This document shows, piece after piece, positions 3,431-57,670 of a stretch of DNA of 64,000 nucleotides. Position 1 is the stretch's first letter, and every line of letters begins with the position of its first letter. The position numbers were made by a program, and so were the translations under genes. The DNA is from Euprymna scolopes (Eukaryota). The notes beneath the pieces are model-generated. The model saw nothing but the letters and a program-made list of their open reading frames with translations. It was not told where the DNA came from and made no database searches. The DNA lies in assembly GCA_053919585.1 (NCBI GenBank), contig CM132825.1. One strand, 5' to 3'.

Positions 3431-3627
3431 CCTATTTACTATGCCTCCCCACGGGACAGAGTTAGACACCAGAGTCGTTTTTTAACGCGGAGAAAAGGTA
3501 CAAAAATAAAAATTGTCTCAGTCGTGAAGGATTTCTCCTCCACCGAAAGAGAACATGAAATAGAAGTGCAGCATCTGAAGAACAAATACTACACTTTGAT
3601 CTTGTCCCGAAGGCCAAGAACCGTGTG
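3431..3627 (-). mobile_element. U2 snRNA-headed retroposed element (SINEU-like or variant-U2 retrocopy), copy 1, apparently full length
   Basis: The minus strand reads GGTTCTTGGCCTTCGGGACAAGATCAAAGTGTAGTATTTGTTCTT (U2 5' end) followed by a body shared with the copies at 18037 and 24540; flanked by a 15-bp direct repeat tgtatgctctatgta (3416-3430, 3628-3642). Confidence 0.85.
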
Positions 3628-17105: not shown

Positions 17106-18036
17106 GCTCTCATAAAAACGTGTTTTTCCGCTGTAAAAAAAAAAACTACTCAATCAAATTAAGTGAAAATTTTTTTCAGAGATCTTCATGTCAAAATGGA
17201 TACATACAATATAACTTCTTTTTTTTTTTCCGATATTTTCATTTTTTAATGCCTTGATTAAATTGTACAAATGCCTTAATTTCATTTTTTTTTAAATCAC
17301 CTCCTTGAAGAATGCACTTAAAAAGGTTTAAACATTTAAAGAGTTACTTTTATTGGTGTTCTTTAAGATTTAAATATTTATTTGATTCATTAAATTTGCT
17401 TGCCATAAACTAAACTAGTTTTTTTTATTTATTTACATTTTCAGTGTCCCACATTCCATATACTTATGTGTTATATAATCCGTATAATTATTTCTTATAC
17501 AATTATTGCATTAATTGTAATTATACAATTATTATACATTCTATGCAATTTTAAGTGTTTTGCAATTTAAAATGTAAAAATTGAATTTATTTAGTAATTA
17601 AAAAAAAAAAAAACTTAAATTTATTTTAAACGAGGGTTGTGGGGCAGCCTTGCTAGGTTGTAAAATATTTTTTAATATATTTTAACTCAAGCAGATTTAT
17701 TTATTGCCAAGCCAATTCTCTATTGAATATTATATTGTACCTAATATGTAGTATTGATTTCAACAGTTACAAAAAAAAATTTTTAAATGACTTGGGTATC
17801 ATCAACTAGAAACAGAACCCAAATATTTAGCACTCCAGCCATGTTCCCTACTGTTTGAGCTATTAACAGATAGATAAGAAAGATTTAAAATTGAATCACT
17901 TCAAGCTATGAATGAATTCGCACATGCATAAAACTAATAGAAATATATTGACCAGTTGAAACAAACATTTTACATTTCAACTCGCTGACATACTTCTGTA
18001 TGCATAATTCATCCATCCAAACAAGTATTTTACTCA

Positions 18037-18222
18037 CTTAGCTTTTTGGTCAAGATCAAAGTGTAGTATTTGTTCTTCAGATGCTGCGCTTCCATTTCTT
18101 CTCTTTCGGTGGAGGATCAGTCCTTTACGACTGAGACAATTTTTTATTTTTGTACCTTTTCTCCACGTTAAAAAACGACCCTGGTGTCTAACTCTGTCCC
18201 GTGGGGAAGCATAGTAAATAGG
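18037..18222 (+). mobile_element. U2 snRNA-headed retroposed element, copy 2
   Basis: cttagctttttggtcaagatcaaagtgtagtatttgttcttcag head; body and 3' end (..gcatagtaaatagg) colinear with copies 1 and 3. Confidence 0.85.
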
Positions 18223-19132
18223 AACTCATTATAAACTCTCCTTGGTGTATGATTACTATCACTATCCTGTTAATTTCTGTGTTATCGGACCAGTGGTTTT
18301 AGAGTTTATCAGTTAAATATTTACACACATATACTGTTCTATTTATATACACTAAATCTTTATCTCGAGAAGTTTTTAATTATTGTTTTTTTAATTATTC
18401 GATTTCTTATTAAAAATACTAACTTTTTTAGGCAAATATTTTTTACAAATTATGACACTTTAAATTATTCCAACCAGTACAGGGTTCGCACAGACTTGAA
18501 AAATCCTTATTTCCTGAAAATAGAATTCTTTGTCCAGTGAAACTTTGTGAAAATACTAAATACTATAAAATTATTTTTAAGTATTAAAAAAGAATACCAT
18601 TAAAATATTTTTTAAATATTGAAAATAAAATGGAAAGGCATTGATCTGAAATTGTATAGTAATAGTGTGGATACAAAAGTTATCTCCCTTTTTCACAAAA
18701 CTACCTTGGTTAGTAACTTTAATTGGCTATTTATTTGTTGTATATTTGATTTTTTTTTTTTTTACCACTTTTTCGAATCACTATGGATTGTAAAACTCCA
18801 AATTTTGTTTTGAAAACTTGAATTTTATCTGGAGGAGGCCTTGAAAATCGACATTGGAAATCTGTACAAATCCGTGTGTTTGTGTTTATCTGCCCTTCTT
18901 TCTCTCTCTCTTCCCTGCCTCTCGCTACTTTAAAATACAGTCGAACCTTAGGGTATGTTTTTTAGTTTACGATGTGGAATACAATGTTTTTCCGGCCCCT
19001 GGTTACATTATTTGCTCCACCTTATGATGTTATTTGGTTATATACTATACTGCATTTTGTTACTAATTTTTAATGTCTGTCTAATATATATAAACAAACA
19101 TATAGTGGAGACTGTTCTTTTTCTCTTTTCAG

Positions 19133-23709: not shown

Positions 23710-24539
23710 GTAAGATCTTTTTTTCCTCTTTCCTTTTCTTTTTCATGCACTTTCTCTTCCTCCCCTTTCCTTTTATTTCTTTTTTTTTTTTTCTTTTTTT
23801 TTATTATTTTAGGTTTTATTTTCTTCACTTTATTTTTTATTTCATATTTTTTATTTATTTTTCATTTTATTTATTTTTCATTTTATTTTTACTATTCTTC
23901 CCTAAAACAAAAAACACCTGCGTTCTTAAACCTACGTAAATTTACAAAATTTATTCAGGACTTTAAGCTAAAAATCTGTTTTACACAAGAATATTTTATC
24001 TGAAAAAAATAAACCGGATTTTGTCCAAAATGTTCTTGTGCAGAACAAATTTTTACACTAATACGTTGAAACCTATTCAATTTCCAAAGCTTCCTGCCAT
24101 CGGTTTTATAAATTTTTCCTGGACATTCGACAGCATTCACTGGCCATCAGTGTGGAACATCGTTTTGCACAAGTATGGCCTGCCCAAAAAAAAGTCATCA
24201 TTGCAGTGAAGCAAATTTATACACATTTCAAGTGTCGCATACAAACAAGATTCTTTCAATGACTGGTTTGCGGTAATTGCTGGAATCGGTCAAGAATGTT
24301 TTTTATTTTTTCTTGATTGGATATTAAAAACAGTAATTAACAATTTGGTTGTTTAGAAAATATTTTACGAGTAAATGTTTGATATATAATAGTTGATATT
24401 TTTAGCGAAAACATTTATTGTTCTTTATGGGAGTGTATTTATTTCAGTGTGAGGAAATGTATCGTTAACATATCCTGAAATATTATTAGGTATTTGAGTA
24501 TGTCTTGAATCTGCAAGTGTGTATATTCCTGATATTGTA

Positions 24540-24721
24540 CCTATTTACAATGCCTCCCCACGGGACAGAGTTAGACACCAGGGTCGTTTTTTAACATGGA
24601 GAAAAGGTACAAAAATAAAAATCGTCTCAGTCGTGAAGGATTTCTCCCCCACTGAAAGAGAACGAGAAATGGAAGCGCCGTGTCTGAAGAACAAATACTA
24701 CACTTTGATCTTGGCCAAAAG
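24540..24721 (-). mobile_element. U2 snRNA-headed retroposed element, copy 3 (slightly 5'-truncated)
   Basis: The minus strand reads cttttggccaagatcaaagtgtagtatttgttcttcag..., with the same body and 3' end; possible ttgta TSD. Confidence 0.85.
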
Positions 24722-50059: not shown

Positions 50060-53000
50060 GAGAAGGACTTGGGTGCAGAACTGCTAGGATGCCTCTTCAG
50101 CCAGTACGGTAAAGTGGAATAGGTGACCCCAGGACGGTCAAAAACTGGGACTCACCAGGACTGCTACACAATAGCAATGAGACTGAAGAGGGAGGGTGTT
50201 CGGGCGATACCAGCGCTGCTGACATACAAGGATGACAGCATGACGGTAATGGTGGAGGGCCACCATCTGCACTGCTGGTTCTGCCAAAAGCCCTAATCAA
50301 ACAACCCAAAAGGTGGTCACAACCCCTGAGACAGCGCCCGCGCCAAAGCAGGCGGCAACAACCCCTGTAACCGTGGCAACAACCCCAGCTCCAAGGAAAA
50401 CCCAGGGGGCCAAAGAGGAGGTATAGAGCACAGTAGTGAGACAAAAATGGAAGCCCATAATCCCTTCCGCCACCGTCCCACCACCAGCCCCAAAATCGAG
50501 GCAGCAAATGCAGCAACAACAACAGCCACTGCAGCCGATGCCGCGGAAACAGTTGCAGCAACAACTACCGCAGCAGCAAGTGTGGCAGCAGAAGCAGAAA
50601 CGACACCAGCGAGAGCAGCAGCAACAAAAACAGCCGCAGCAGCAACTAGAGGAGCAGACACAACCAACGGTCCCCACACCAATTGATACGGGGATCAAGC
50701 GGAGAAAAGACTGCTTCTCTGAGGATGAATCTGCAAGTGAGAGGGAGAAGAACTCAACCTCACCTTGGTTCGTTCAAAAGAATTTAAAAAAATAAATAAA
50801 AGAAGAAAAGGGGAAGAAAAGGTGGCCCCCACTCCCTGTGAACATATACCATCCCTTAACAACAAAATCCACTTCAGACACCAAACCAGACACCACACCA
50901 ACAACAAATATGGCACCAACACCAGACAAACACCAGGCACCACACAAACACCTGTCCCCATACCAATGACAACTGAGCGCCCCCCCCCCAAAAAAAAGGA
51001 AAAGAATGAACCAAGGGAAGGGAGAGACTACACTGCCTCTCGCAGACCAACCAAATTAAAAGCCCTTGGCCCCAAGGAACTATGTTATGTAGACCCTCAA
51101 TCTGTGGTAACAGACATTTCCCATCGGCAGAGGAAAAACTTAAAACCCCTGCTCGATTACAAACAGATAGAGGGGAAAGATGTAAATATCCCCTCAAATT
51201 TCCCGGACGCCCGCTCCTAATAAATTTTGTCAGAACTCCAGAGGCCTGCAAGACCAACTTGTGGACAAGGCTGCAGACCGCTGGAGGGGCGTTTCTGGGA
51301 AGCGAACTGGTTAAGAAAAATGACCCTTCTCTTGATGAACTGTTAAAAAAATCCAAGGGAAGGGTCCCAGTGTTGGTCCATCCATCATTCTACAGGGCCA
51401 TGAAATTAATTTATCCTTTGGACGTCGGCAGCATTGCAAGAGAAGGTCAGGATATGAAAAACCTGACCACCTTAAGTATGGCACATAACATTGGTGTCCT
51501 CTCCCCGGCTGACTTTTGAGCTGAGTGTGACACACCCTAAAGTAGATACCATGGTTTTGAATTTGGCTAGTTTGAATGCGAGGGGCTTGAGATCACCAGG
51601 TCGGATGGCTCGCCTCCGGCACAACCTCTTGTCCCTGGGAGTGGATGTGGCTGCGATTCAGGAAATGCATTTTGTTTCCTCTGTGGACCGTAAGTTGCTG
51701 GCCCGAGATTTTGAGGTTTTCTCAGCATATGGCACCCTGCGGGGGAAGGGAGTTTCCGTGCTGGTTAAACATACCCTGTCGGTGACGGTCGATATTGTTC
51801 ATAGGAATGCGATGGGCAGGCTAGTTGTGGCCGATGTTACTGTAAAAGATTCTGTGTTTTGAGTGATCGCAGTTCATGCGCCCAGCACCGCTCGTGAGAA
51901 GGTCTCATTCTTCAGTCAGCTTGACGCGTTTGTAGATTGTCGGAAGCGGGTAGTGCTAATGGGGGATTGGAACGCCATCTTAGACCCCGAGATAGATAAG
52001 GTAGGTGGCAGTGCTAGAGGATCAGAGACGTGCGAGTCCAGCCTGGCTGTCTGATGGCTAGATGCGGTCTGGTTGACAGGTTTCGGGTTGAACATCCGGG
52101 GCAGGAGATGTGAACGTGGACCAATAGCATTTCCTCCTATCCAAACACTTACTTGGACAGGATGTTAGTTAGGAGAGGCGAAGTAGACTTCTTATCTTGT
52201 CCCACATTCACTTGGCTAGGCCAGACAGACGATAAACTAGTTATGGCCCAGCTGAAGCTAGGAAATAGGTCTAAGTTAGTGGCTCACTGGAAGTTAAACA
52301 CCTCACTTCTGGAGATACAAGACTTCCAAGAGAAGCTACTAGAATTAATTCAAAAAGCAGTAGTGGGGGCGGTTACTGGGAGTAAGTGGTGGGTAGGTCT
52401 AAAAGCCAAAATTAGAATCTTCTCCGTCAAGTATGCCCAGCTCCTCACACTATATAAAGCCAAGACGAAGAGGAAGCTACAGCAGAAACTAGCCCGGGCT
52501 GCAGGAAGGGTGATAGGGTTAGTCAGGAACTAGCTAAGCAGGACCTTTTGTGTGAGAATAGCGAGCGTTATGAAGATCAAGTAGTCATAGCTAGGCTTAG
52601 AAAGGTAAGCAATGAAGCAGTCAACTCCAACACTGACGTGCGTCGTGAAATTTCTAGGCGTGGCTCAGACAAGTACATTGCAAAGGTAAGACATCCGGAT
52701 GGACGCACCCTGGAATTGACTCGGGAGATTTGCGAGGGGTTTCAAGAAGCGTTTTACGCAGCAGCCCAGTCTTCTCCCCAGCTACAACAGCTCGTTGCGA
52801 GGGCCGGGTGACGGAGCGGGAGGTTTTTACTGCGCTGAAGCAAGTCAGCTGTGACAGATCGCCGGGACTCGATGGTCTGCCATACAAACTGTATTTGAGG
52901 CTGTCGCCCATGTTTCTGCCTCTTTAGACAGATGTGTTCAACCATTGGTTTGCTCAGGGATCCATCCCAGAGCAAGTCACCAAGGGACTGAACACATTGC

Positions 53001-55550
53001 TGAGGAAAGGTGACGGGCATGGTGGGGAAGAGTTAGACGACTACAGGCCCATAACTCTGCTAAACACAGAGTTGAAGATTTTGGCCAAGGTCCTGTCGAA
53101 TCGGCTACAGGTTGTTATCGACGAGTTGGTTGAACCGGAACAGAACTACACTGCGAAGGGGAGATCGATTCAGAACAACTTGCACCTGATACGCACGATC
53201 CTAGAGGGAAGGATAGATGACAACACAGAAGCCACGCTGATCAACTTAGATCAGTCCAAAGCTTTTGATAGGGTCGACCATCGTTTCTTGGCATCTGCCT
53301 TAGAGGTTTTAAACCGGACTTCTGCAAGTGGATCTCCGTGATATATCGACAGTCCACAGCCGTTGTGCAAGTCAACGGAAAGCGCTCGAAACCCTTTGTT
53401 ATCTCTCGGTTGGTTCGTCAGGTTTGTCCGCTGTCGCCCCTGCTCTATGTCCTGGCTTTGGAGCCCCTGCTCCGCAAGCTGAGACATGGGGAGGTAAATT
53501 CGGCCCTGCGCGAAATTGCAATACCTGGTGGCTCAGCCGCCAATGGATCCGCGTTCGCCGATGATGTCACGGTCTTTGTGTCAGAGACATCGATATCATG
53601 TTGGAGGCGCTCGCTCAGTACGAAAGAATTACAGGGAACAAGATAAACTGCAGCAAGTCGGTAGGACTGCGGGGGGAGCGCGTGGAGTGACAACGCCAAC
53701 TTCTCGGCGCCCTTCAGCTGGACGGATGGCCTTGTTCGGATCCTCGGCGTGTGGTTCGGACTAGGTCTCCAGCTTGACAAAAATTGGTTGGAGGTACGGT
53801 CTAAGGTGGAGGCTGCAGTCAATTCGTGGCTTCCTAGGAAACTTTCCTGAAAGAGTAGAGCTGAGGCGTGCGCCACTTACATCTTTCCTCTCATCCTTTA
53901 CCGACTGGCTGTACTTCCCCTGCTTGCACAACACCTAACAGCTTTCGTCGAACTCTTGTCCTGCTTCTTTGGGACAGACGAAGACACTGGGTGAGCAGAC
54001 AGGTCTGTATTCAACGTCCGTGTGAGGGAGGCTTGGGAATGCCGGACTTGAAGTGTCATCGAGACGCTGGCCTTCCTGAGCCACTATATGCAAGATGACC
54101 AACCGTGGCACCCCGTGGTTACTGCTGCCTTCCCTCGACCTCATTCTCAACCCTTCTATCGAGAGCCGTCGCAGACCGTGGGGAGAATCTGCCTACATGA
54201 AAGAGTGCCGAGCCATGCTAAACTGACTACCAAGGTCCAGCAACCTTGTGACTGCTACCCATAAGGAAGTACACAGGGATATAGTGAAGGGGGGCAGCCG
54301 ATGACACGCTATGCAAGCGTTTGGGTTGGCAGCAGAGTGAGATCCACTCCACGTGGAGCTGGGCGCCAGGTTCGAGTCATCTGAACAATCTGGCGTTCTC
54401 TCTGACCTGACGATTGGCCTGAAATACACTTCCACTCAACAAGATACAATGTAGTTCTGGGTTTTTGGAGTCGCCTGATTGTCTCCGTTGTGGGACAACA
54501 GCCGTAGAAACGACTGATCACGCTTTCTTCGATTGCCGCGAACTCCGCCGGTACTGGTCATAAGTTACAGCTCGCCCAATTACCGTATCCAATTTTGTGG
54601 ACAATGTGATGCTGCCATGGGACCGAGAAAGACAAATGGTCTACGTTACGATGCTGGCTGTGGCGAGTATGGTGATTTGGATGTCGCGTCTGCAAGGTTG
54701 CCGGGAGTGAGGTGTTGTCTTTTTCTGATCAGGATCTGATCGCTTTCTTTAAACACCAACTACGGATGAAGATCAGATGTGATAGAAGAAGGCTGCATTG
54801 CATGGCATTTGACAGAAGATGGATACATGTAGCAAGTCTGTGTGTACGAAGAGAAGCCAAATTTGAATACATGTTCCCCGCCTAGGTGTGGAACGCGCAG
54901 TTCCGTAAAGTAAAATTAAACAAGTAGCCTCTCAGCTAGCTGAGTGTGTGTTCCATCCTTCCCCGATTAGGAAGCCTCCAAGATCGCTACCCTCTCCTAC
55001 TTTCAATTTTTGTTTTCACCCCTCACTCTAAATTTCACCCATCTTGGAGAGAAAGAAATACAAACTAACCCCCATCTCACCCACAAAAATTTCTTTTTTC
55101 CATTTCCCCGCATCTAGAGGGTATCCCCACTTAGAGACTGGCCCGCAGAAGGCAGGTTCCTTTTACAAACCTAGTGGAATGGGCAGTCTATCAACTAGAC
55201 GGGGTTGGGAGGGTCCTACTAATCACCTTTTATTTTTAATTCCCCCGCCCTAGATGCAAATGAATTATTGTACCATTTTATTGTTATCTTTTTTGTTTTT
55301 ACACGTCAATAAAAAATGTTTTAAAAATTGGGAGGTAAGTAAGACGTCCCCCAGTATGAAAGGGTGAATGCGGTATTATGGTGACAAAAGATACTAGCTG
55401 GGAGAAACTTTTGATTTTGTTTAGTTCTCTAGTGATAAGGATGACCAACAACCCCTACAATCCCCCCTTTTGAGTTGGCCATGTGCCTAAGTTTTTTGTT
55501 CATTGTTGATTTTCACTGTATTTTTAACATGAATAAAGGATTTAATATCG
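50060..55550 (+). mobile_element. Tx1-clade (L1 group) non-LTR retrotransposon, 5'-truncated and degenerate: ORF1 ~50060-51519, ORF2 51551-54885, 3'UTR
   Basis: ORF1 remnant FSQYGKVE...VMVEG..HCWFC (RRM plus CCHC start). ORF2: MVLNLASLNARGLR, AAIQE, LMGDWNAILD (APE endonuclease); SPGLDGLPY, YRPITLLNTELKILAK, LDQSKAFDRVDH, CPLSPLLYVLALEP, SAFADDV (RT); EGGLGMPD and a C-terminal zinc knuckle. Many stops and frameshifts. Confidence 0.92.
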
Positions 55551-55750
55551 CAAAGTGTAGTATCTGCCGGAACAGATACTGCAAGTGACAACCCCACATA
55601 AAAGACCTTGGTCAATGTAGGGGCAACCCTTCATACCAATTGTCACTATCCAGTTCTCCTACTCCCTGGAGAGTTGGTCCCCATTTCCCCTTCACTCCTC
55701 ACATTAAAAATCGGCCTTGTGCCTAATTTGCTCGGTAAGGGAGCAAATAA

Positions 55751-55802
55751 ATACCCTTTTCTTAGCCTTTTGGCCAAGATCAAAGTGTAGTATCTGTTCT
55801 TA
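55751..55802 (+). pseudogene. U2: U2 snRNA 5' fragment (~nt 1-49: stem I plus branch-point recognition region)
   Basis: ttcttagccttttggccaagatcaaagtgtagtatctgttctta matches the invertebrate U2 5' end; the remainder of U2 is absent. Confidence 0.85.
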
Positions 55803-56524
55803 CTACACGCTGTACTTATGTCTGTAACTTTGTGATATAAAGTGGGGGATCACTTTTCTGTATTAATTTAATGTAAAACGATCACCCACTTTACAACCAG
55901 TCAGTCTCAAAGCCATTCAAGTAATTGCTCAGATCATTCAAGTTGTTTTTGAAGGATTCCAGTTATTTTTTAAGCATTCAAGTCATTCTTAAGGCCATTC
56001 AATTCATTCTTAAGTTCATTAAAGTCATTCTAAGTCATTTGCTTTATTTATTTAAGTCATTTCAGCTCATTTTAGTTTATCTTTAAGAATTTCATGTCAA
56101 TCTTACATTCACGCATTCATTACACGAGAGCATGAGACTAATGGCTATCGGCCTTGTTTTTACTTACACTTGTTTTTCTGCTTGATCATTTCTCTGTAAA
56201 TTTTGGAATTTATTTTTCACTAATTTTGACATGACACTTATTTTTTATTTTTTTTATTTTTATTTTTTATTTTTTTTTTACATAGAGGGAATTCTAGACA
56301 AGAATTAAGTAGAAAAAGTTGTTGTAAAGTTTTCAAAAAGTCTATATTTGATATTCCCGCTGAGTCCCCCCTTTTTTCTTTTAAAGAAAACAAATTAGTT
56401 CTCATTTTAAGCAAAAAATGTAATTATCTGCAATTACTAAGTCAGGAGGCAAGCTCCATAACTAAGGCTGGGCACCCAGGCTAGTTTTGAACAAAGAGAA
56501 GAGGTGGAGTCAATATTATCCAAG

Positions 56525-57309: not shown

Positions 57310-57670
57310 AGGTAGATTTTACGAGTTGCAGTGCACCCGAGTATGGTACAACATCATATTTGGCTCCATATCTGAATTACGTGTTGGCAGAAACTGACTT
57401 CCGAACTAACCCGTCCGTGGCCAAGTCTTTCCAACTCCATAGCCGGTGAGATGCACAGGCCATCTACAACTAAATAATGTTTTTGTAGCAAGGAGTTCTT
57501 TTTACAGGGTGAGGGTGCTGGCTCCACACTCAACCTTCCCAGAAGGTACATACAGCGCCTAGCCTTCCCAAATGGTCACCCATCTGGTACTGGCCAGGCT
57601 CAACGTTGCTTAACTTCGGTGTTCGGTGATCTGGCGAGAACCGGTGTGTCAACGTGATTGTGCCGTACAA
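57310..57670 (-). mobile_element. 5S rRNA-headed element (SINE3-like); 5S part ~57547-57670 followed by a non-5S body
   Basis: The minus strand reads tgtacggcacaatcacgttgacacaccggttctcgccagatcaccgaacaccgaagttaagcaacgttgagcctggccagtaccagatgggtgacc..gctgta (5S-like, with a 7-bp internal duplication and no oligo-T terminator). The 3' boundary is approximate. Confidence 0.75.

What the first reader, a model, noticed from the sequence alone, without database searches (positions are those of the whole stretch)
55530..55810. Tx1 LINE ends in U2 sequence and is followed by a PSE-like plus U2-5'-end cassette: possible U2-targeting, self-repairing retroelement
Seen: right after the Tx1 3'UTR AATAAA comes CAAAGTGTAGTATCTG (55551-55566, from the U2 branch-recognition region). 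The same 16-mer recurs at 55781-55796 inside a U2 5' fragment (55751-55802). The 214 bp between them contain tcactcctcacattaaaa about 59-42 nt upstream of the U2 start (PSE-like in sequence and spacing) and a tttgctc/gagcaaa hairpin. Known: Keno elements (Tx1 clade) and Utopia elements insert site-specifically in the U2 5' region. Inference, three alternatives: (a) a Keno-like element carries a promoter and the U2 5' end at its 3' terminus, so insertion regenerates the U2 gene downstream; (b) a second short element inserted at the same U2 target with a 16-bp TSD; (c) a co-mobilised piece of a U2 array. The U2 piece shares the non-canonical CTTAGC and GGCCAAG variants with the U2-headed elements, so this LINE is a candidate partner or source for that family. 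Caveat: a similar tcacccctcac motif occurs at 55016, so the PSE call is weak.
Basis: partly seen in the sequence, partly recalled or inferred. Interest (0 to 1): 0.8.

Follow-up and report, generated by a model that had tools for sequence, protein, structure and literature searches.

The report
U2-homing LINE stacked in U2-headed SINE
This stretch is the junction zone of a dead jumping gene (a Tx1/Keno-like LINE) that homes to a short piece of U2 spliceosomal RNA sequence, which here sits in a U2-derived short repeat present in tens of thousands of copies and not in a real U2 gene; the supposed promoter motif is part of the LINE family's own 3' tail.

Summary
The 16-mer occurs twice (0.04 expected by chance) and a U2 5' piece lies at 55756-55802. 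But 55550 is not the end of the repeat. Every genomic copy runs on to about 56160 and is then flanked by unrelated DNA.

Three parts are nested here:
- A decayed, 5'-truncated APE+RT LINE (50074-55550). Its nearest Swiss-Prot relative is Xenopus Tx1.
- A 190-bp piece (55567-55755) that carries this LINE lineage's 3' tail.
- The 3' 405 bp of a roughly 540-bp SINE-like host repeat with U2-derived heads (55756-56160).

U2 targeting is supported:
- Intact sister LINEs interrupt the genuine 764-bp U2 array.
- The junction of LINE tail to U2 nt 28 occurs about 5,900 times.
- 15 of 18 informative truncated copies have the host's 5' part upstream.

The cassette is most likely part of the LINE's transposing unit. 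It follows the LINE tail in 82 of 89 copies (11 others unclassified), against 47 of 100 bare heads.

The "PSE" is a conserved tail motif. It is absent upstream of real U1 and U2 genes, so promoter-based self-repair is not supported. A co-mobilised piece of U2 array is rejected.

It remains open whether the head behind the tail is a 45-bp target duplication or is RNA-templated. Tails of this type abut nt +1 of real U2 and U1 genes.

The scan already reported this system on other DNA of this genome.

The parts
50074..55550 (+). Keno/Tx1-like LINE body, 5'-truncated inside ORF1 and decayed (many stops). ORF2 ends near 54885. The A-like 3' UTR spans 54886-55550 and holds the conserved core GGCCATGTGCCTAAG at 55477-55491.
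   Evidence: Genomic matches begin at 50074. ORFs are broken. Identity to intact LINEs in the U2 array is 67-74% at nucleotide level and 57-75% at amino-acid level. Tail alignment.
51491..51862 (+). Fragment of the apurinic-type endonuclease domain
   Evidence: Pfam Exo_endo_phos, E 2.4e-6. 57% identical to the ORF2 N-terminus of L086.
52934..53646 (+). Reverse-transcriptase domain fragments in two frames
   Evidence: Pfam RVT_1, E 4.7e-13 and 4.3e-6. 75% identical to L085 ORF2.
55551..55566 (+). First U2 nt 28-43 copy. It is a fossil target copy between the LINE's A-like tail and the tail module (nt 28-45 in typical copies).
55551..55583 (+). Fold-back hairpin made of U2 nt 34-43 and its inverted copy, at the 5' edge of the module
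   Evidence: -16.4 kcal/mol, z -4.3. 55570-55583 matches the reverse complement of U2.
55567..55755 (+). Tail module, a short Keno-like 3' end.
   Evidence: Alignment with LINE tails from the U2 and U1 loci and with the U2-headed SINEs. Found behind several different partners. Star-shaped tree. Fold.
55756..55802 (+). U2-like head (about U2 nt 4-49) of the host repeat, the landing pad. It includes the second 16-mer at 55781-55796.
   Evidence: 22,184 such heads in the genome.
55756..56160 (+). 3' 405 bp of a dispersed, roughly 540-bp SINE-like host repeat. It comprises the U2-derived part to 55890, then the body and a tail ending ..GGCTATCGGCCTTGTT. The host's 5' leader and first head are missing at this locus.
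   Evidence: All copies end at 56158-56163 next to unrelated DNA. Empty hosts are L076 and L081. Host against window. RNA depth stops at 56163.

Best explanation
SHOWN
- 55530-55810 is an internal junction zone, not an element end.
- A LINE with an apurinic-type endonuclease and a reverse transcriptase lies next to the U2 branch-site-recognition sequence. The target is the U2-derived head of a dispersed, roughly 540-bp SINE-like repeat, not a U2 gene.
- Such heads number about 22,000, against about 1,200 real U2 genes, and they keep U2 nt 4-49 nearly intact.
- The 3' junction of the LINE's older tail is fixed at U2 nt 27/28. The 5' junctions vary, as expected for target-primed reverse transcription with 5' truncation.
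- The 214 bp between the two 16-mers are a short 3'-end module of the same LINE lineage. It has a C-rich stretch, the GGCCTTGTGCCTAA core, a stem-loop and TAAATACC. The module is followed by a complete U2-like head.

INFERRED
- The module first landed at the same target as a second element. It was then taken up by read-through, so that LINE + U2 nt 28-45 + module now move as one unit whose real 3' end is the module tail.
- The stem-loop tail is the part the reverse transcriptase recognises.
- The repeated 16-mer is what remains of successive target copies.

OPEN
- The complete head behind the tail may be a target duplication of about 45 bp. Or it may be copied from RNA, either a read-through transcript or a U2-like RNA, after a nick at nt 38/39.
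- How this particular copy lost the host's 5' part.
For: Extent and dispersal:
- More than 40 copies of 55300-55900 at 83-93% identity, all ending at 56158-56163 with unrelated flanks.

Real U2 genes:
- A 764-bp tandem array is interrupted by 7.1-7.6-kb LINEs with intact ORF1 and ORF2 (APE, RVT_1, zf-RVT). These are 67-74% identical in DNA to the window LINE.

Clade:
- The best Swiss-Prot structural match is the Tx1 149 kDa protein (E 1e-62, 23% identity), ahead of L1 ORF2. The nearest solved structure is L1 ORF2p.

Site specificity:
- The tail to nt 28 junction pattern gives 5,885 hits and no control hits.
- Of 18 informative 5'-truncated copies, 14 have the host leader directly upstream and 1 has it inverted. 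Truncation and junction points differ between copies.

Module:
- It is homologous to the tails of sister LINEs and of the window's U2-headed SINEs.
- The stems differ in sequence between two tails but both fold into long hairpins: -43.5 kcal/mol (z -6.1) and -42.8 kcal/mol (z -4.5).

One transposing unit:
- The module follows the LINE tail in 82 of the first 100 listed copies, and the host body follows in 7. After bare heads the counts are 47 and 53. Fisher p = 9e-12.
Against: - The window copy has no host leader upstream of 50074, as do 3 of 18 other copies. Its own insertion event is therefore not documented, and no target duplication was found.
- Modules behind LINE tails do not form a clade of their own, and modules also follow other tails. 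Separate insertion of the module is not excluded for single loci.
- The counts come from the first 100 listed zero-mismatch matches on two contigs.
- The LINE's 3' junction (nt 27/28) differs from the published Keno/Utopia site at nt 39 (PMC4640811).
- No phylogeny against Keno references could be run.
Confidence: 0.8

Rival explanations
1. Two independent landings at this locus. The 214-bp module is a separate non-autonomous element that inserted on its own into the U2-like head. The LINE later, or earlier, landed in the neighbouring target copy. The 16-mer is the target duplication between them.
For: Modules occur behind A-type tails, behind other modules and behind bare host heads, always with the same 5' edge. 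The module tree is a star with no clustering by context. Tandem modules occur in L071, L074 and L075.
Against: The LINE tail is followed by the module in 82 of 89 classifiable copies, against 47 of 100 bare heads. Independent landings predict equal shares.
Confidence: 0.25
2. Self-repairing retroelement with its own snRNA promoter. The tail carries a PSE and the U2 5' end, so that a working U2 gene is rebuilt downstream of each insertion.
For: Tails of this type are followed by a complete coding sequence from nt 1 in real U2 genes (3 of 3 B-type copies) and in real U1 genes with gene-like 3' flanks.
Against: - The motif has no counterpart upstream of genuine U1 genes, whose conserved box GTGTGATATAAAA lies at -36 to -24, or upstream of the U2 array.
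- Its distance to nt +1 differs between tails, about 45 nt in the module against about 90 nt in the B-type.
- The same motif lies in the tails of U2-headed SINEs that are followed by non-snRNA DNA.
- No pile-up of RNA starts was seen at the head.
Confidence: 0.05
3. This window copy did not land in a resident host repeat. It is a secondary retrocopy of a read-through RNA (LINE + module + host 3' part) that used the host's own tail and inserted at a non-U2 site.
For: No host leader or head lies upstream of 50074, and the upstream DNA is unique. 3 of 18 other copies are alike. The host family is itself dispersed and has a defined 3' end.
Against: No target duplication flanks 50074 and 56160. A target deletion at the 5' junction explains the same picture, and copies with graded loss of the head are seen.
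Confidence: 0.2
4. A co-mobilised piece of a U2 gene array.
For: There are two U2 fragments 230 bp apart.
Against: The real array unit is 764 bp, and its spacer shares nothing with 55567-55752. The first fragment is followed by a non-U2 fold-back.
Confidence: 0.01

Closest known systems
Keno (Tx1-clade non-LTR retrotransposons specific for U2 snRNA genes; Kojima and Fujiwara 2004, as cited in PMC4494074 and PMC4640811)
   Same: APE + RT ORF2. The nearest Swiss-Prot protein is Tx1. Sense-oriented insertion in the 5' third of U2 sequence. Precise 3' junctions and variable 5' junctions. Relatives sit inside real U2 genes.
   Different: - The 3' junctions lie at nt 27/28 (window type), about 21/22 (A type) and nt +1 (B type and module). 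The published site at nt 39 appears only in some module copies.
- The main target is a U2-headed repeat, not U2 genes.
- Found in a mollusc genome, according to earlier notes of this scan. Keno is reported from vertebrates, lancelet and cnidarians.
SINEU and Tx1-Mar of crocodilians (PMC4494074)
   Same: Short elements with U1- or U2-derived heads are linked to Keno-related Tx1 LINEs. snRNA pieces are added repeatedly at 5' ends, insertions occur in tandem, and some LINEs carry snRNA heads.
   Different: - Here the SINEs share a structured 3' tail with the LINEs and have no poly(A).
- The LINEs land in the snRNA-derived head itself, not in a Mariner transposon.
Utopia (restriction-like-endonuclease LINEs in U2 genes, PMC4640811)
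   Same: Same target region of U2, with tandem insertions in U2 arrays.
   Different: A different endonuclease type. Utopia's 3' flank starts at nt 39.
R1/R2-type rDNA-specific LINEs (from general knowledge, not tested here)
   Same: Homing to a multicopy RNA gene. Co-transcription and read-through of target sequence are proposed to guide precise junctions.
   Different: A different clade and target. No decoy SINE target is known for them.

Membership tests
Tx1 clade / Keno | ORF2 with an N-terminal apurinic-type endonuclease and a reverse transcriptase | tested here: met
   The window fragments match Exo_endo_phos and RVT_1. Intact relatives have APE + RVT_1 + zf-RVT, and ORF1 has a CCHC knuckle.
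Tx1 clade / Keno | RT phylogeny groups the element with Tx1 and Keno references | tested here: inconclusive
   No Repbase references were available. The best Swiss-Prot fold and sequence match is Xenopus Tx1 (E 1e-62, 23% identity), ahead of L1 (18-19%). This is a ranking, not a tree.
Tx1 clade / Keno | Site-specific, sense-oriented insertion in U2 snRNA sequence | tested here: met
   Four sister copies lie in the genuine U2 array. There are 5,885 junctions of tail to U2 nt 28. The host head lies upstream of 15 of 18 truncated copies.
Tx1 clade / Keno | 3' flank begins at U2 nt 39, the same site as Utopia (PMC4640811) | tested here: not met
   The window-type tail joins nt 28, the A type joins nt 22 and the B type joins nt 1. 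A junction at nt 38/39 is seen only for some module copies (L074 and L075; 732 RNA reads).
SINEU-like (snRNA-headed SINE): the host repeat and the window's U2-headed SINEs | 5' part derived from U1 or U2 snRNA | tested here: met
   Rfam U2 hit. Alignments to this genome's own U2 gene up to about nt 113-120.
SINEU-like (snRNA-headed SINE): the host repeat and the window's U2-headed SINEs | 3' poly(A) tail, as in crocodilian SINEU | tested here: not met
   Hosts end in ..GGCCTTGTT. The U2-headed SINEs end in ..TAAATAGG.
snRNA gene promoter (PSE) | A motif shared with genuine snRNA genes of the species at a fixed distance upstream of nt +1 | tested here: not met
   12 genuine U1 upstream regions share a box at -36 to -24, and 8 of them also share a T-rich stretch near -85 to -70. 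The U2 array upstream is GC-rich. Neither resembles tcactcctcacattaaaa.

The most novel reading that the evidence does not exclude
Tails of the B/module type are joined to nt +1 of two unrelated snRNAs. These are U2 genes and U2-like heads, and, for a sister LINE, 168 U1 junctions. The same tail also joins U2 nt 38/39, the classical Keno site.

The most novel reading that is not excluded is this. The nick is always inside the snRNA sequence, and the 5' part of the snRNA is rebuilt from RNA at each insertion, from a read-through transcript or from the snRNA itself as a bridging template. The element then leaves a complete snRNA coding sequence, and a reusable landing pad, behind it. This process would also create snRNA-headed SINEs.
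Probability: 0.35. Interest if true: 0.75.

Novelty: new variant of a known kind. Interest (0 to 1): 0.55.

Why it matters
U2-specific LINEs were thought to be held back by the low copy number of their target (PMC4640811). Here a Keno-like lineage has about 5,900 copies of this junction. Its landing site is carried by tens of thousands of U2-derived short repeats, and some of these repeats share the LINE's tail.

This gives a concrete, testable case of how snRNA heads of SINEs and target-specific LINEs can feed each other. It also shows how a homing endonuclease can expand without harming the real genes.

For annotation, U2-like hits in this genome are mostly landing pads, not genes.

Tried and rejected
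- An Rfam U2 family search of the whole genome failed twice. A U2 pattern without the extra A found only 4 odd copies. The first U1 pattern found nothing.
- The protein homologue search and the Atlas search returned no names useful for clade assignment.
I could not fetch full-length window-type LINEs, their 5' ends, or the DNA upstream of the U1 loci.
- Shared private variants between the head copy upstream and the one downstream of an insertion: none shared among roughly 20 private changes counted by eye in about 10 loci. That is too few to decide between target duplication and RNA-templated heads.
- RNA reads showed no places where many molecules begin or end, so no transcription start could be called.
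- PSE reading: rejected. U2-array fragment: rejected. Host as a DNA transposon: a 12-nt inverted match between its ends was seen, but it is not terminal and was not pursued.
- No target duplication was found for the window copy.
- The Keno paper of 2004 is not held.
Full report
**Observation.** The sequence is as described. The 16-mer CAAAGTGTAGTATCTG is exact at 55551 and 55781. The window holds six matches with up to two mismatches, against 0.04 expected. Rfam's U2 model matches 55753-55890 at 52.4 bits. Against this genome's own U2 gene, 55759-55802 is 93% identical to nt 6-49, and the 16-mer is nt 28-43. The small stem in the cassette folds, and a stronger fold-back lies at 55551-55583.

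**Extent.** 55550 is not an end. A search of the genome with 55300-55900 gave more than 40 full-length copies at 83-93% identity out of about 5,000 candidates. All of them run on to 56158-56163, end in ..GGCTATCGGCCTTGTT, and are followed by unrelated DNA. A second sample, drawn with the tail only, gave the same end. Family-level RNA-read depth also falls to zero after 56163.

**Real U2 genes.** The genuine genes form a 764-bp tandem array on another contig, with 1,175 pattern hits. The array is interrupted by inserts of 7.1-7.6 kb. I read four of them.
- All four are LINEs with intact ORF1 and ORF2 (APE, RVT_1, zf-RVT). They are 67-74% identical in DNA to window 51526-54046.
- All four have U2 nt 1-47 in front.
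- One, which I call the A type, is followed by U2 from about nt 22.
- Three, the B type, are 98.5-99% identical to each other and are followed by a complete U2 from nt 1.
- The ORF2's best Swiss-Prot match is the Xenopus Tx1 protein, ahead of L1. The nearest solved structure is L1 ORF2p.

**The window LINE homes to U2-like heads.** Upstream of 5'-truncated copies at dispersed loci lies one and the same sequence: a leader, a degenerate first U2-like head, and a second head. This sequence is broken at a different base in each copy. Of 18 informative copies, 14 have it in direct orientation, 1 has it inverted and 3 lack it. Uninterrupted copies (L076, L081) show that this is a repeat of about 540 bp, whose 3' 405 bp are window 55756-56160. 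The junction of LINE tail to U2 nt 28 occurs 5,885 times, against no hits for the control pattern. Intact heads number 22,184. Each copy is therefore an independent, site-specific landing in a U2-derived head.

**The 214-bp piece.** In typical copies the order is LINE ..TAATATCT, then U2 nt 28-45, then CCGGCAG.. with a fold-back, then a C-rich stretch, GGCCTTGTGCCTAA, a stem and TAAATACC. The window copy is a mutated version of this.
- The same core and end are found in the 3' UTRs of the window LINE and of the A and B LINEs.
- They are also found in a U1-linked sister LINE and in the three U2-headed SINEs of this window.
- The B tail and the U1-linked tail fold into long hairpins whose arms differ in sequence.
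- The piece also occurs behind other tails, behind itself and behind bare heads. Its copies form a star tree with no clustering by context.
- Yet it follows this LINE's tail in 82 of the first 100 listed junctions, with the host body following in 7. After bare heads the counts are 47 and 53 (p = 9e-12).

I read this as a former second element that has become the functional 3' end of the LINE unit. Module-only copies would then be extreme 5' truncations resolved at the internal U2 nt 28-45 homology, or a separate short RNA.

**Promoter test.**
- Genuine U1 genes share a box at -36 to -24, and most share a T-rich stretch further upstream.
- The U2 array upstream region is GC-rich.
- Neither resembles tcactcctcacattaaaa.
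- The motif is a conserved tail motif. The U2-headed SINEs have ctccacgttaaaaaacg.. at the same place.
- Its distance to nt +1 differs between tails.
- The real U2 spacer shares nothing with 55567-55752.

**What follows the tail.** The head behind the module is the host's own head type. The window's A in CTTAGC is private to this copy. Junction variants include one to three host bases that lie in front of the head. B-type tails abut nt 1 of real U2 genes. A module, and a sister LINE tail, abut nt 1 of real U1 genes with gene-like 3' flanks. That U1 junction occurs 168 times, mostly in runs with a period of 7.2-7.4 kb. The same module tail also joins U2 nt 38/39 (L074 and L075; 732 and 383 RNA reads). 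This is the published Keno/Utopia site (PMC4640811).

Two models remain. In the first, the bottom-strand nick lies at the front edge of the head and produces a target duplication of about 45 bp. In the second, a single nick at nt 38/39 is followed by copying of nt 1-38 from a read-through or U2-like RNA. I could not decide between them.

**This copy.** The LINE starts at 50074 inside ORF1, and unique DNA lies upstream. It has many stops. The host's 5' part is missing and no target duplication was found. The cause is either a deletion at landing or a secondary retrocopy.

**Known relatives.** Keno is the U2-specific Tx1 lineage. Crocodilian Tx1-Mar LINEs group with Keno, some carry U1 or U2 heads, and they are held to move SINEU elements. 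Up to 2015 only Keno and Utopia were listed for U2, and only Dada-U1 for U1.

New here:
- the landing pad carried by the SINE-like repeats themselves;
- the shifted junctions;
- the structured tail shared between LINEs and SINEs;
- the composite 3' end.

**Earlier notes of this scan** on other DNA of the same genome describe the same system. My results agree with them. I add the intact LINEs in the real U2 array, the negative PSE test and the tail-module association.

**Limits.** There is no reference phylogeny. The junction shares rest on the first 100 listed matches. No further genome DNA could be fetched.

Noticed in passing
G000:C46 150-208 Mb; loci L098, L102, L089: A sister LINE tail, and once the module, abuts nt +1 of U1 snRNA genes. 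The junction pattern gives 168 hits, mostly in tandem runs with a 7.2-7.4 kb period. The U1 3' flanks look gene-like. A 2015 review of the field lists no U1-specific LINE.
   Followed up: partly
window 3441-3625 (-), 18036-18228 (+), 24537-24721 (-): Three copies of a U2-headed SINE, made of sequence like U2 nt 2-113 plus a tail homologous to the module tail. The copy near 3.5 kb is flanked by a 15-bp target duplication (tacatagagcataca) at a non-U2 site.
   Followed up: partly
window 57547-57670 (-): A 5S rRNA-like sequence (Rfam, 69 bits) followed by non-5S sequence. It is probably the head of a 5S-derived SINE and not a gene.
   Followed up: no
L085-L088 (G000:C9 168.87-168.96 Mb): Two LINE types sit in the genuine U2 array. 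Their ORF2 proteins are 72% identical and their ORFs are intact. In two of the three B-type copies the upstream partial U2 reads GGTCAAG where the array reads GGCTAAG. This may mean that the U2 nt 1-47 leader travels with the LINE RNA.
   Followed up: partly
window 55908-56163: In a poly(A) RNA-seq run, family-level reads over the host body are strand-biased about 5 to 1. This hints at transcription of the host family itself. The direction cannot be told without the library type.
   Followed up: no
L076 (empty host copy): The host repeat has TTAGTCGCGTGC near its 5' end and the exact reverse complement GCACGCGACTAA near its 3' end. This could be a long-range pairing or a remnant of inverted repeats.
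   Followed up: no
genome-wide: About 11 of 100 LINE-tail junctions continue after U2 nt 47 with TCTC or TCCC. This is neither the module nor the host body, and may be the 5' end of another stacked element.
   Followed up: no
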